From NCBI RefSeq assembly GCF_006345805.1, contig NC_043009.1, positions 20,894,001 through 20,958,000 of the forward strand: 64,000 nt of DNA, in the 5' to 3' direction. Of the stretch, positions 17,201 through 20,200 are shown one piece after another. The notes under the pieces are model-generated. The model was given only the letters and a program-made list of their open reading frames with translations. It had not been told where the DNA came from and ran no database searches. The position numbers and the translations under genes are program-made. How positions within the stretch are numbered: position 1 is the stretch's first letter; each line of letters opens with the position of its first letter. The DNA is from Octopus sinensis. Its lineage: Eukaryota.

Positions 17201-20200
17201 AGTTCTAGTCAAGTATTGTCTAACTCATGCCAGCAGGGAAAGTAGATATTAAATGAAGATGATGATGACAATATATATATATATTGTAAAAAATAATGTG
17301 TTTTGAATGGCACAATAATAACAACAATGGACTATAATAACTGTTAAAATTTAATCATCCATAGTCTGATATGATATTTCGGAATATAAAAATTCCTTCT
17401 TCAGATATCGCTAGGAATTGATCAAGTCACTGCTATAAGCAGTTTTCCAACGTTTTTTTTTATTTATGGAGGCGTCTCTGCAGTGGTCTCACAAAGCTCC
17501 TTCCAGAATGCCTCATGAGAAGTACATGAGCGCAACCATGTCTCAAGCTCTTGTGTGCTGGTACATCCATAGTGCTGCTTCTAAGTTATGTATCATATGT
17601 GCAGTTTCCTTTTTTTCCCTCCTTTCTTTTTTTATAAATAATACATGAGCATGTTTTCAAAAATGAACCTACACGCATCCAGATGTAGCTAAATAATATA
17701 CTGACTGCCAACCTCCGGCCTGTTGTTAATTTGGGGCCCTAATCTGTCTATGAGGATAGCTTCCTTAATTCTTAGACTACCCAAATTTCTTTCATTGGCC
17801 TCAATTGTGACTGTTATGCTTTTGTTGGTGTTCTGGCATCTGTCTAGATGTTTTCCTGAGGAGGAGGCTCTCGTGTTCAGATGTTCTTTGAAGCAGATGT
17901 GTAATGGTCTTGTTGTGCTACCCACATAGAACTTGTTGCATTTGTTACATTGTATTCTATACATAACATTTACCCTTTGGCATAAACCTGTATCATGGAT
18001 GGGGCAGTTTGCTAGTGTGCATTGATTGCTGTCTCTTGCTCATTTCTTTGCGAGGTGTCTTCTCAGAGAGGGGCCAGAGTGGGCTAGTTGTATGTCTAGC
18101 CCTTCTCTTCTTATGGCTCTTCACTAAAATAGGGTATTTTAAGGGAGCATGTGTTGCTAGCTTTTCTGTGTGTTGGTCGTCTTGGGTACTTAAGCTGATT
18201 TACAATGGATATAGGGTACCTGTTGGCTTTCAATATCTCTAGGGAGTGTGCCATGTGGGTCAGCTTGTCCTCTGTCCTGCTGCACTTGCCCTGGATGCAT
18301 GCAAGTTCATTTCTGGCGTATCCTATTTTAGCACCAAGTGGAAGTGCTGAATTGTACTGGACAAACATATCTCTACTGGCTGCTTTCCTGTAGAACTCGG
18401 TGTGGATCTCTCCTTCCATTTTTAAGTTTTGTCAATGTTTTATGTTGCACCATGGGTAAGTTTGGTATTATTTTTTTCGATTCCTTCCTTACGATGTTGG
18501 AGATAGACTGTTTCAATCTGGATAGATTGTGGTTGAGTTCTTGGTTGGCTGGGGATGGGTGAAGTGGGTAATCTAGTTGGTATGTGGGAAATTTGCCGAG
18601 TATGTTGCTGTTGTTCTTTATCACCGATAGCCATTTGAGTTGGTAGGCTGTTCAACAAAAGTTGGCTTCCAGGTTGAATAAGATTTTCTCATTCAGCTGT
18701 TAGCTCAAGATAAATTTAGGGCTCAGACTGAGAAGTTCTAGTTCTTTATGGGAGAGTGACCCACTCAAGTCTGTGATTAGGGATTTCATGTTGAAGGTGT
18801 GCTGGTGTCCTCAATGTTAGTGTTATCTTGTTTGGTGGACATGTCCTGTTCATCTGTGTTGGTGCAATAGGCTGAGTTGTGGTGGTATTTGGTACAAAGC
18901 TTCAGGAATTTAAGTTTGAGGCATTTTTTCTCTTGGTCAATGCAGTGGTGGTAGCATCAGTCAAAAGCTGCGATAGTTCTTCAGTATGTATGTTCAATGG
19001 TTGATGTGATGCTGCATATTATTTCAGAGAATTTTTGTATGTGCTCATGTAGTTGGTGGTGTAGATGGTGTATGATTTTTCTGATGATGAACGTATGTAT
19101 GTCTTTCAGTGATTGTCGAAGGGTATGTACCTGATAGTGTTGGGAATTATATTGTTTTTTAGGCACTGTTTAAGAAAGTTTATTTGGCATCCAATTTTAG
19201 CAAGTTTCTCTGATAGCTTAATTAACTCCCTAGCAGTTGCGAACTCAGCCTGGCCCAGACGTAGAGATAGGAGAGTATCGTAGTTTGCTTGAAGCATTGT
19301 GTATTGTATATACTCTCATATATATATGTATAGGTATAAGTTAGAGGTGTTTAAAATCTCTAAGGGATGGTTAAATCCAAAGGCACTCCTGGTGATTAGC
19401 TGCGTAGGTACAGTCCTTGGTAAAAGCTATATGGTAGCAGGTAATTCAACAGGTAAACAGTAGTTTAAATTATATGCAAGAAGAAAATGGAGGAAAAATA
19501 ACAGGAAGAAGTTGGTCGTTTGCACTAGTAAGCTATTAATTTAATTAATTAATAAAGAAAAGTGGTAGTAATGGTACTTTTACGATCGTTTCTGTTTACT
19601 AGTTGTAGTGGTAGACATCATCAGAATGCATAGCCATATGTAGAGATAGGAAGAGTGAAAGACATAGGGATATATTGGTGACGTGAATGTATCCCTATGA
19701 CTTTCGCTCTTCCTACCTCTACATATGGCTGTGCATTCTGATGATGTCTACTGCTACAACTAATAAACAGAAACGATTGTAAAAGTACCATTACTACCAC
19801 TTTTCTTTATTATTGATTGTTGTTAGTTTTTTATTTAGTAAACTTTACCTTTTAAATATCCACAAAAACGTCTAACGGTGTTTGATTCAGTGAATGCGGA
19901 ATGTACTCTACTGACTTTCTTTGACCAATCCATCTGTTTATGTAGCAACATTTAAACAACTTTTATGGGGCATTGTATGACTACAAGAAGACTTATCAAC
20001 GCTTTATGTCAATGTCTAAATTTATAAAACCATCTAACCCTTATTATTATTCGTCAATTCAATATTCCAAGATGCAAATGGAATTATAAAGGAGAAGAAA
20101 ACTTTAAACAGAATATTTCCAAGTAACTTTATAATAGAGATATCACTGAATCTAGCCAGACTAGACAGCAGTTGTAGGGTTTAGGGTTTTCAACTGGTTG

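What the first reader, a model, noticed from the sequence alone, without database searches (positions are those of the whole stretch)
17368..17409. Apparently intact minimal hammerhead ribozyme in the sense strand of a host-gene intron
Seen: all conserved core nucleotides, 5-bp stem I, 4-bp stem II, a self-complementary AUAU stem III and an AUC triplet. It lies at the 3' end of the Penelope-like element, on the minus strand, inside the intron between exons 20272 and 15775. Known: PLE minimal hammerheads with palindromic stem III cleave mainly as dimers. Inference: TTC6-like pre-mRNA could be cut here in trans by another transcript of this repeat family, giving a repeat-RNA-dependent switch on intron integrity or transcript completion.
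Basis: partly seen in the sequence, partly recalled or inferred. Interest (0 to 1): 0.72.

Follow-up and report, generated by a model that had tools for sequence, protein, structure and literature searches.

The report
Penelope retrotransposon hammerhead motif in intron
The 42-base motif is a real, sequence-intact minimal hammerhead ribozyme, but it is the standard 3'-end ribozyme of a broken Penelope-like retrotransposon sitting in an octopus-type gene intron, with no evidence that it regulates the host gene.

Summary
Minus strand 17409..17368 reads GAUAU|CUGAAGA|A|GGAAU-UUUUAU-AUUCC|GAA|AUAU|C|AUAUC. That is a complete type-I minimal hammerhead, with predicted cleavage between 17373 and 17372. 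A descriptor scan finds only this site in the window and none in 600 dinucleotide shuffles.

The motif lies 88 nt from the 3' end of a Penelope-like element (PLE, 19307..17284, minus strand) inserted in (TA)n. This copy has stops, a frameshift and a ~0.9 kb deletion that removes the RT catalytic core.

Related PLE copies, reached through protein homology, carry the motif at the equivalent place. These are three Octopus bimaculoides loci (one of them 3'-truncated before the site) and contigs of unidentified source. Stems I, II and the stem-III palindrome differ in sequence but stay paired: 8 of 13 pairs show compensatory changes. The motif also has the published hallmarks of PLE minimal hammerheads: an unpaired base between A9 and G10.1, a G10.1-C11.1 pair, and a palindromic stem III without a loop.

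The element is in the sense strand of a 4.5 kb intron of a TPR-repeat gene, and the splice junctions are verified.

The proposed trans-cleavage switch is untested and unlikely. There is no second hammerhead in the window, the stem-III palindrome is 4 bp and all A-U, and published activity of this class is low or protein-assisted. This is an ordinary new member of a known kind.

The parts
17368..17409 (-). Minimal type-I hammerhead ribozyme motif. Stem I 17409-17405 / 17372-17368. Core CUGAAGA 17404-17398. Unpaired A 17397. Stem II 17396-17392 / 17385-17381 with loop 17391-17386. GAA 17380-17378. Palindrome AUAU 17377-17374. C17 at 17373. Predicted cleavage between 17373 and 17372.
   Evidence: 1 hit in the window, 0 in 600 shuffles.. 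Covariation.
17284..19307 (-). Penelope-like element: one unit, defective. The 5' end ACAATACACAATG carries the ORF ATG at 19297. The 3' end ...TTTACAA is at 17284. The boundary is ambiguous by up to about 6 nt because ACAA occurs at both ends. There is no upstream pseudo-LTR.
   Evidence: Alignment to O. bimaculoides copy L001: window 17284 is followed directly by window 19307-19280, a 31-nt 'tail', then (TA)n. Protein hits.
17689..17964 (-). GIY-YIG endonuclease remnant ORF of the PLE ([21 protein letters not shown]...). Its stop codon lies 280 nt upstream of the hammerhead.
   Evidence: Pfam GIY-YIG E = 0.0043, below the cutoff. 77% identity to O. bimaculoides LOC128251599. tblastn.
18111..18419 (-). 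Post-RT (thumb/linker) coding remnant of the PLE. A frameshift at about 18120 separates it from the endonuclease part, and there is an in-frame stop in the linker.
18416..18419 (-). Junction of an internal deletion of about 0.9 kb. It removes the RT catalytic core: residues 1-82 of P0001, including YVDD, have no counterpart in the window.
   Evidence: L001, L008 and L009 each carry about 910 bp between the segments that are adjacent here..
19106..19297 (-). N-terminal ORF remnant of the PLE ([16 protein letters not shown]...). The ATG is 10 nt from the unit's 5' end.
   Evidence: The same start motif is seen in L001, L003 and L121.
17270..17283 (.). (TA)n microsatellite abutting the PLE 3' end. 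A TA-rich stretch also abuts the 5' end at about 19308-19335. This is the insertion target.
   Evidence: (TA)n is a published preferred target of PLEs (PMC8557442).
20272..20398 (-). Upstream host exon of a TPR-repeat gene. Its last base is 20272 and the donor GT is at 20271-20270. Its 5' limit is approximate.
15659..15775 (-). Downstream host exon of the same TPR-repeat gene. The acceptor AG is at 15777-15776 and the first base is 15775. Its 3' limit is approximate. The intron 20271..15776 (4,496 nt) contains the PLE in sense orientation.
   Evidence: Ungapped 113-aa alignment across both junctions to P0019.

Best explanation
This is the hammerhead ribozyme motif that Penelope-like retrotransposons (PLEs) carry near their 3' end, in the pseudo-LTR.

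In this family the motif sits about 280 nt after the GIY-YIG ORF and about 90 nt before the unit end. When units lie head to tail, the same motif therefore also sits about 95 nt upstream of the next unit's ATG.

Its inferred role belongs to the transposon. Two motifs, from tandem units or two transcripts, pair through the loopless palindrome (here AUAU) and swap stem-I strands. This forms a double hammerhead that cuts after C17 and trims PLE RNA out of longer transcripts, probably helped by the PLE protein or a chaperone.

The copy in the window is a single, dead unit: no upstream pseudo-LTR, RT core deleted, ORF interrupted. It inserted into a (TA)n tract in an intron of a TPR gene, in the sense orientation. 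Its hammerhead is still sequence-intact because the copy is only moderately decayed, not because the host uses it. As a lone monomer in the intron it is expected to be catalytically silent.

Shown: the motif, its position, the homology, the covariation, the defects of this copy and the intron context. Inferred: dimeric cleavage and the processing role (from the literature on the class), and inactivity at this locus.
For: - Motif and chance.
- PLE identity: the GIY-YIG/thumb remnants are 77% identical to O. bimaculoides LOC128251599, which carries an RT domain, plus 17 further hits.
- Unit ends were defined by the head-to-tail junction and 31-nt tail in L001. (TA)n flanks both ends. This matches published PLE anatomy: HHR near the 3' end, a 30-40 bp tail, (TA)n targets (PMC8557442, PMC11167929).
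- The same motif occupies the same place in relatives. L009 is 41/42 identical while its flanks are 75-87% identical. L003 and L006 have an intact core. L001, L004 and L121 each have one core substitution. In L121 the motif lies about 95 nt upstream of the unit start and ATG.
- Covariation: 93% of cells are paired, 8 of 13 pairs have compensatory changes, and slid controls reach at most 46%.
- All four hallmarks listed by Cervera and De la Pena are present: an unpaired nucleotide between 9 and 10.1, G10.1-C11.1, a palindrome at 15.x-16.x, and a short helix I (PMC4209133).
- An unrelated PLE family in metagenome contigs has the same architecture (CUGAAGA-A-GGAA..UUCC-GAA-AUAU-U). It sits about 70-90 nt before the end of homology, and in L109 about 330 nt after a GIY-YIG ORF.
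- Defects of this copy.
Against: - No cleavage data exist for this sequence.
- Rfam hammerhead models do not score it, though they also miss the controls.
- The relatives' motifs were picked with a descriptor that requires pairing, so the pair counts lean towards the structure.
- Only four lineages were sampled, and only three same-family copies reach the motif position.
- L009 is 98% identical in the HHR against about 80% in its flanks. This shows selection in the transposon lineage; it does not exclude selection at this locus.
- The role of PLE hammerheads in the transposon's own cycle is itself unsettled. HHR mutants still insert in vitro, and Naiad PLEs thrive without HHRs (PMC11167929, PMC8557442).
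Confidence: 0.85

Rival explanations
1. The intronic motif is cut in trans when another transcript of the same repeat family pairs with it as a double hammerhead. Host pre-mRNA integrity or completion would then depend on the level of PLE-family RNA.
For: - The motif is sequence-intact, in the sense strand, and inside a verified intron.
- At least one other copy (L009) has matching stem-I and palindrome sequences, so compatible partners do exist in an octopus genome.
- Dimer-only activity is the accepted model for the class (PMC4209133, PMC6765202).
- Vertebrate retrozymes, which are PLE-derived HHR repeats, are reported as depleted from introns. That would fit a cost of genic HHRs (bioRxiv 10.64898/2026.07.22.740005).
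- Intronic ribozymes that compete with splicing are known, for example CPEB3 (PMC10919898).
Against: - The double hammerhead requires opening an intramolecular stem I that is stable in context (P about 0.97).
- It gains only a 4-bp all-A-U helix. Nearest-neighbour energy is -7.8 kcal/mol, against -12.8 for two monomers and -15.8 for a non-catalytic GAUAUC:GAUAUC dimer.
- There is no cis partner in the 64 kb.
- Min-HHRs show low activity even as tandem dimers and mostly at non-physiological Mg2+ (PMC4209133).
- The Anolis PLE HHR needed the PLE protein, and no RNA-seq ends mapped to its site (PMC11167929).
- From my own memory of the literature, not checked here: slow ribozymes placed in introns do not block splicing, because exons stay tethered to Pol II (Dye et al. 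2006; Fong et al. 2009).
- Nothing shows conservation of this insertion.
Confidence: 0.04
2. The motif is conserved in the PLE but is not mainly a nuclease in vivo. Instead it is a structured 3'-UTR element recognised by the PLE RT/EN protein, for example for RNP assembly near the internal RT start sites, with cleavage as a weak side activity.
For: - In Anolis, HHR catalytic mutants did not affect insertion in vitro, cleavage needed the protein, and RT starts lie internally near the 3' end (PMC11167929).
- Here the motif sits 88 nt from the 3' end.
- Two independent relatives carry G8A (L001, L121) and one carries U4C (L004), yet all keep every stem paired.
Against: - The exact hammerhead core is kept in the window, L009, L003, L006 and the abundant metagenome family. 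This is hard to explain without selection on catalysis.
- The copies with core substitutions may simply be dead copies.
- PLEs of fungi and plants carry fully active HHRs (PMC4209133).
Confidence: 0.1
3. It is a chance match in A+T-rich intron sequence.
For: - The region is A+T-rich. Stem I and the palindrome are low-complexity (AUAUC occurs twice in tandem), so an alternative register exists at -5.5 against -6.4 kcal/mol.
- The folding z-score is only -1.25.
- There is no Rfam hit.
Against: - 0 hits in 600 shuffles.
- The motif is at the expected place in a PLE.
- The homologous motif is found in relatives, with compensatory changes.
Confidence: 0.01

Closest known systems
Minimal hammerhead ribozymes of metazoan Penelope-like elements (Cervera and De la Pena 2014, PMC4209133; Lunse, Weinberg and Breaker 2017, known to me only through citations in PMC6765202 and PMC7761336)
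   Same: Type-I topology; the full catalytic core; an unpaired nucleotide between A9 and G10.1; a G10.1-C11.1 pair; no loop 3 and a palindromic 15.x-16.x; a short helix I; location in the PLE 3' region/pseudo-LTR in sense orientation; many solo copies from truncated elements.
   Different: Helix II is short here (4-5 bp with a U-rich 6-8 nt loop), against 6-8 bp in the Schistosoma and Drosophila examples and 7 bp in the metagenome family. The palindrome is only 4 nt and all A-U. The host lineage (octopus-type cephalopod) was not seen in the main text of the papers I read; supplements were not checked.
Canonical type-I hammerheads of animal satellite DNAs and non-LTR retrozymes (newt satellite 2, Schistosoma Sm-alpha, mussel, coral and axolotl retrozymes; PMC7229834, PMC7761336)
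   Same: The same core and topology; a weak helix III, so cleavage as dimers in tandem transcripts; an evolutionary link to PLE pseudo-LTRs (bioRxiv 10.64898/2026.07.22.740005).
   Different: Those have a real helix III/loop 3 and loop1-loop2 tertiary contacts, occur as short tandem arrays, give abundant circRNAs and are found by Rfam RF00163. Here there is no loop 3, no tandem array and no Rfam hit.
Conserved intronic self-cleaving ribozymes of amniotes (HH9/HH10 hammerheads, cited in PMC7761336; the CPEB3 HDV-like ribozyme, PMC10919898)
   Same: A sense-strand ribozyme inside an intron of a protein-coding gene.
   Different: Those are monomer-active, single-copy and conserved at orthologous positions over long evolutionary times. 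Here the motif is a dimer-only relic of a multicopy transposon, with no evidence of orthologous conservation.

Membership tests
Hammerhead ribozyme (any type) | Catalytic core C3 U4 G5 A6 N7 G8 A9 ... G12 A13 A14 ... A15.1-U16.1, H17 not G | tested here: met
   CUGAAGA at 17404-17398, GAA at 17380-17378, A15.1 at 17377, U16.1 at 17374, C17 at 17373.
Hammerhead ribozyme (any type) | Three helices around the core in the correct order (type I: 5' and 3' ends in helix I) | tested here: inconclusive
   Helix I (5 bp, extendable) and helix II (4-5 bp) form and are the monomer MFE. Helix III cannot form within one molecule (A-U closing a 2-nt 'loop'). It exists only as an intermolecular 4-bp palindrome duplex.
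Hammerhead ribozyme (any type) | Match to the curated covariance models (Rfam RF00163 and related) | tested here: not met
   No hammerhead hit at the gathering threshold or at E <= 10. The control min-HHRs in L003 and the metagenome family are also missed, so the models do not cover this subclass.
Hammerhead ribozyme (any type) | Site-specific self-cleavage giving 2',3'-cyclic phosphate and 5'-OH ends | not testable with these tools
   Needs a transcription/cleavage assay or end-specific RNA sequencing.
PLE minimal hammerhead (min-HHR) | Unpaired nucleotide between A9 and G10.1 | tested here: met
   A at 17397. It is A or U in all seven related motifs. Hallmark per PMC4209133.
PLE minimal hammerhead (min-HHR) | G10.1-C11.1 base pair | tested here: met
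   G 17396 with C 17381. G-C in 5 of 7 relatives and G-U in 2.
PLE minimal hammerhead (min-HHR) | No loop 3; positions 15.x-16.x palindromic (dimerisation) | tested here: met
   AUAU here. AUUAAU in L003, L004 and L006; AAUU in L121; AUAU in the metagenome family.
PLE minimal hammerhead (min-HHR) | Located in the pseudo-LTR/3' region of a PLE, same strand as the ORF | tested here: met
   280 nt after the GIY-YIG stop and 88 nt before the unit's 3' end. Equivalent position in L001, L003, L004, L006, L009 and L109. Upstream-of-ATG position in L121.
PLE minimal hammerhead (min-HHR) | Family-level conservation with compensatory changes in helices | tested here: met
   7 sequences, 93% paired, 8 of 13 pairs with changes on both sides, 0 of 500 shuffles as high, slid controls at most 46%. 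Caveat: the relatives were selected with a pairing descriptor.
Penelope-like element (EN+ type) | Reverse transcriptase domain | tested here: not met
   Not met in this copy: the RT core is deleted. The homologous O. bimaculoides copies have PF00078.
Penelope-like element (EN+ type) | [quoted passage not shown] | tested here: met
   [27 protein letters not shown] at 17689-17964. The Pfam GIY-YIG match is weak (E = 0.0043, below the cutoff), but homology to PLE proteins is strong (E = 3e-109).
Penelope-like element (EN+ type) | Pseudo-LTR/tandem arrangement, 30-40 bp tail, microsatellite target | tested here: inconclusive
   The window copy is a single unit without a pseudo-LTR or tail, flanked by (TA)n. 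Relative L001 shows the 31-nt tail and L121 the upstream pseudo-LTR.
Host-co-opted intronic ribozyme (HH9/HH10 or CPEB3 type) | Conservation at the orthologous intron across species | not testable with these tools
   No cephalopod genome could be searched by DNA. L009, L001 and L008 are non-orthologous copies whose flanks do not align.
Host-co-opted intronic ribozyme (HH9/HH10 or CPEB3 type) | Architecture able to cleave in cis as a single copy | tested here: not met
   No helix III hairpin is possible, and there is no second motif in the 64 kb.

The most novel reading that the evidence does not exclude
In octopus-type genomes, sense-oriented intronic relics of this PLE family remain substrates for a double hammerhead. 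The partner would be abundant family transcripts, helped by the PLE protein. Bursts of PLE expression would then cut host introns such as this TPR-gene intron and lower completion of the host transcript. That would be a transposon-activity-dependent, trans-acting ribozyme effect on host genes.
Probability: 0.04. Interest if true: 0.7.

Novelty: new member of a known kind. Interest (0 to 1): 0.2.

Why it matters
As it stands, this is a clean, well-anchored example of a PLE minimal hammerhead in a cephalopod-type genome.

It adds a small comparative set: four lineages whose stems and palindromes differ in sequence but stay paired. This supports selection on the hammerhead fold within PLEs.

It also shows that Rfam's hammerhead models miss this subclass, so genome annotations will under-report it.

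It would matter more only if intronic relics like this one were shown to be cut in vivo. That would make thousands of dispersed PLE relics potential trans-regulated cleavage sites in host transcripts. Nothing found here points that way.

Tried and rejected
- **Rfam.** I searched at the gathering threshold and at E <= 10 and found no hammerhead. I rejected this as evidence against the motif after control min-HHRs were also missed.
- **Covariance model from the 111 metagenome hits.** I considered building one as an independent test. I dropped it because those hits were retrieved with a pattern taken from the window's own motif, so the test would be circular.
- **Orthology.** I checked whether L009, L001 or L008 are orthologous to the window's intron. 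They are not: only the PLE and dispersed repeats align. Conservation at the locus therefore could not be assessed.
- **More same-family copies.** A protein search with the PLE N-terminal region gave only two short contigs. One of them, L121, was useful for the upstream pseudo-LTR arrangement. L122, L123, L002, L005 and L007 gave no motif. L008 is 3'-truncated before the motif.
- **Lunse et al. 2017.** The paper is not in the library.
- **Thermodynamic stability.** The z-score is -1.25, which is unremarkable. I did not use it for or against.
- **Nearest-neighbour energies of the double hammerhead.** They disfavour it for all class members, not only this one. They are therefore only weak evidence against activity.
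- **TTC6 orthology of the host gene.** Not established.
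Full report
**1. The observation**

The minus strand of 17409..17368 reads GAUAUCUGAAGAAGGAAUUUUUAUAUUCCGAAAUAUCAUAUC. Parsed as a type-I hammerhead:

| Part | Sequence | Coordinates |
|---|---|---|
| Helix I, 5' strand | GAUAU | 17409-17405 |
| Core C3-A9 | CUGAAGA | 17404-17398 |
| Unpaired base | A | 17397 |
| Helix II | GGAA(U)/(A)UUCC | 17396-17392 / 17385-17381 |
| G12-A14 | GAA | 17380-17378 |
| A15.1-U-A-U16.1 | AUAU | 17377-17374 |
| C17 | C | 17373 |
| Helix I, 3' strand | AUAUC | 17372-17368 |

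- I wrote a descriptor from the published features of minimal hammerheads. It finds this one site in the 64 kb on both strands and nothing in 600 dinucleotide-preserving shuffles.
- A relaxed version (one core mismatch, helix I >= 2 bp) adds only one poor hit, at 54724.
- Rfam reports no hammerhead, even at E <= 10 on a 401-nt slice. It also misses homologous and analogous minimal hammerheads used as controls, so it simply does not cover this subclass.

**2. What surrounds it**

Upstream on the same strand lie three coding remnants:
- a GIY-YIG endonuclease remnant (17964-17689)
- a post-RT remnant (18419-18111)
- an N-terminal remnant starting at ATG 19297

A conceptual translation of the C-terminal part hits 18 proteins. 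The best is Octopus bimaculoides LOC128251599 (77% identity, E = 3e-109), which carries an RT domain. So the window very probably comes from an octopus-type cephalopod, and the element is a Penelope-like element (PLE).

- **Unit ends.** The genomic copy encoding that protein (L001) aligns to window 18416-17284. It then continues directly with window 19307-19280, followed by (TA)n. This is the head-to-tail junction with the 30-40 bp 'tail' described for PLEs (PMC8557442, PMC11167929). It fixes the unit ends in the window at 19307 (5') and 17284 (3'). Both ends abut TA-rich microsatellite, a known PLE target (PMC8557442).
- **Position of the hammerhead.** It lies 280 nt after the ORF stop and 88 nt before the unit's 3' end.
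- **State of this copy.** It is dead. About 910 bp present in L001, L008 and L009 are missing at 18419/18416, which removes the RT core including YVDD. There is also at least one frameshift and an in-frame stop.
- **No partner.** The copy has no upstream pseudo-LTR, and no other PLE fragment or hammerhead exists in the window.

**3. Relatives**

The motif appears at the equivalent place in these loci:

| Locus | Relationship | State of the motif |
|---|---|---|
| L009 | same family | Identical except C17 to U, an allowed H17 |
| L001 | same family | G8A, plus a 2-nt deletion in the helix I 3' strand |
| L003 | 48% protein identity | Intact; CCU/AGG, GGAC/GUCC, AUUAAU |
| L006 | more distant | Intact; AGUCU/AGACU, GAAG/CUUU, AUUAAU |
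| L004 | same as L006 | U4C |
| L121 | more distant | G8A; UCUU/AAGA, GAGAU/AUCUC, AAUU; about 95 nt upstream of the unit start and ATG, i.e. the upstream pseudo-LTR arrangement |

- On the seven-sequence alignment, 93% of cells pair and 8 of 13 pairs show compensatory changes. No shuffle reaches that, and slid controls stay at or below 46%.
- Caveat: the relatives' motifs were found with a descriptor that demands pairing. Their positions relative to homologous ORFs are independent of that.
- Between the window and L009 the motif is 41/42 identical, against 75-87% in neighbouring segments. This suggests selection on the motif in the transposon lineage.
- A metagenome scan with a pattern taken from the window motif returned 111 contigs.
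  - Nearly all belong to another repeat family, with consensus ACACC-CUGAAGA-A-GGAAGGC-CGU-GCCUUCC-GAA-AUAU-U-GG.
  - Homology among those copies stops about 70-90 nt after the motif. One contig (L109) has a GIY-YIG ORF about 330 nt upstream on the same strand.
  - It is therefore a second PLE family with the same architecture and placement.

**4. Comparison with what is known**

Cervera and De la Pena (PMC4209133) defined PLE minimal hammerheads by exactly these traits:
- core boxes with no helix III or loop 3
- an unpaired nucleotide between 9 and 10.1
- a conserved G10.1-C11.1 pair
- palindromic 15.2-16.2
- a short helix I
- location in pseudo-LTRs, with thousands of solo copies from truncated elements

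They found no activity as monomers and low activity as dimers, mostly at non-physiological Mg2+. Reviews give the same picture (PMC6765202, PMC7761336). In the Anolis PLE the hammerhead cleaved only with the PLE protein present. Catalytic mutants still inserted in vitro, and no RNA-seq reads ended at the site (PMC11167929). The window motif is thus an ordinary member of this class. Its distinguishing details are a short helix II with a U-rich loop and a very short all-A-U palindrome.

**5. The intron context**

- The host gene is on the minus strand. One exon ends at 20272 (CAG|GUAAGU) and the next begins at 15775 (UGUCAG|G).
- The two exons, joined to the following one, align without gaps over 113 residues to a TPR protein (P0019, 51% identity) and to other TPR proteins.
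- 'TTC6-like' was not verified.

**6. The proposed switch**

Mechanism of a double hammerhead:
- The 15.x strand of one RNA pairs with the 16.x strand of the other.
- Each core therefore cuts the other molecule.
- Helix I must then also form between molecules, by strand swap.

For this sequence:
- The monomer MFE is helix I plus helix II (-6.4 kcal/mol).
- In context, helix I is extended and has pair probability about 0.97.
- The double hammerhead scores -7.8 kcal/mol, against -12.8 for two monomers and -15.8 for a non-catalytic GAUAUC:GAUAUC dimer.
- The nearest-neighbour model also disfavours the double form for the relatives, though less so for the two with 6-nt palindromes (L003, L006). 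This is therefore weak evidence.

Other points against the switch: the window holds no cis partner, the copy encodes no protein, and the class is slow in vitro. From my own memory of the literature, slow ribozymes in introns do not prevent splicing (Dye et al. 2006; Fong et al. 2009). A recent preprint reports that PLE-derived retrozymes are depleted from introns in vertebrates (10.64898/2026.07.22.740005). That is compatible with some cost of genic hammerheads but is not specific. I put the switch at about 4%.

**7. Verdict**

- The identification as a PLE minimal hammerhead in a sense intron is confirmed.
- The regulatory inference is unsupported.
- The finding is a new member of a known kind and of low interest.
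- The best explanation is a transposon-borne processing ribozyme motif surviving in a dead intronic copy (confidence 0.85).

Noticed in passing
window 17088-17283 (copies at 13203-13391, 25041-25214, 6696-6882, 38251-38359, 54025-54084, 56998-57137, 12284-12344); L009 7585-7784: A SINE-like dispersed repeat of about 200 bp with an (ATC)n/(TA)n end directly abuts the PLE's 3' end. The same juxtaposition (PLE tail, then microsatellite, then this repeat) occurs in the non-orthologous O. bimaculoides locus L009: the alignment runs through 17088, while the flanks beyond do not align. Either PLEs target the microsatellite end of this repeat, or the composite was duplicated.
   Followed up: partly
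window 19550-19812: A 263-bp near-perfect palindrome (90% self-complementary) lies about 240 bp upstream of the PLE's 5' end. It contains the two CTGATGA...GAAA pattern hits at 19589-19624 (-) and 19738-19773 (+). These are not hammerheads and have no similarity to the PLE copies fetched.
   Followed up: partly
window 3-2378 and 3630-6021: A 2.4 kb direct duplication (91.5% identity, period about 3.6 kb) in the G+C-richest part of the window (51% in the first 4 kb). Its nature is unknown.
   Followed up: no
window 7543-7642: A run of 100 N (assembly gap).
   Followed up: no
window 24496-24955: A dense block of about 460 bp of tandem and inverted repeats (many overlapping self-matches at 91-97% identity).
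   Followed up: no
L010-L120 (metagenome contigs, e.g. L022 1057-1088, L109 2680-2711, L020 94-166): The pattern taken from the window motif matched 111 metagenome contigs. Almost all belong to one abundant repeat family with a 7-bp helix II minimal hammerhead. L109 shows it about 330 nt downstream of a GIY-YIG ORF. L020 has two copies 41 nt apart in tandem, and L041 and L052 have inverted pairs. The host organism of these contigs was not identified.
   Followed up: partly
L001 5304-5336; L121 383-419; L004 4759-4800: Two independent relatives carry the same core substitution G8A (CUGAAAA) and one carries U4C, while all helices stay paired. These could be dead copies, or a hint that the fold matters beyond catalysis.
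   Followed up: partly
Rfam searches of the window and of L003, L010, L011, L014, L022, L029, L056: Rfam 15 hammerhead covariance models detect none of the PLE minimal hammerheads, even at E <= 10. This subclass is invisible to standard Rfam-based annotation.
   Followed up: yes
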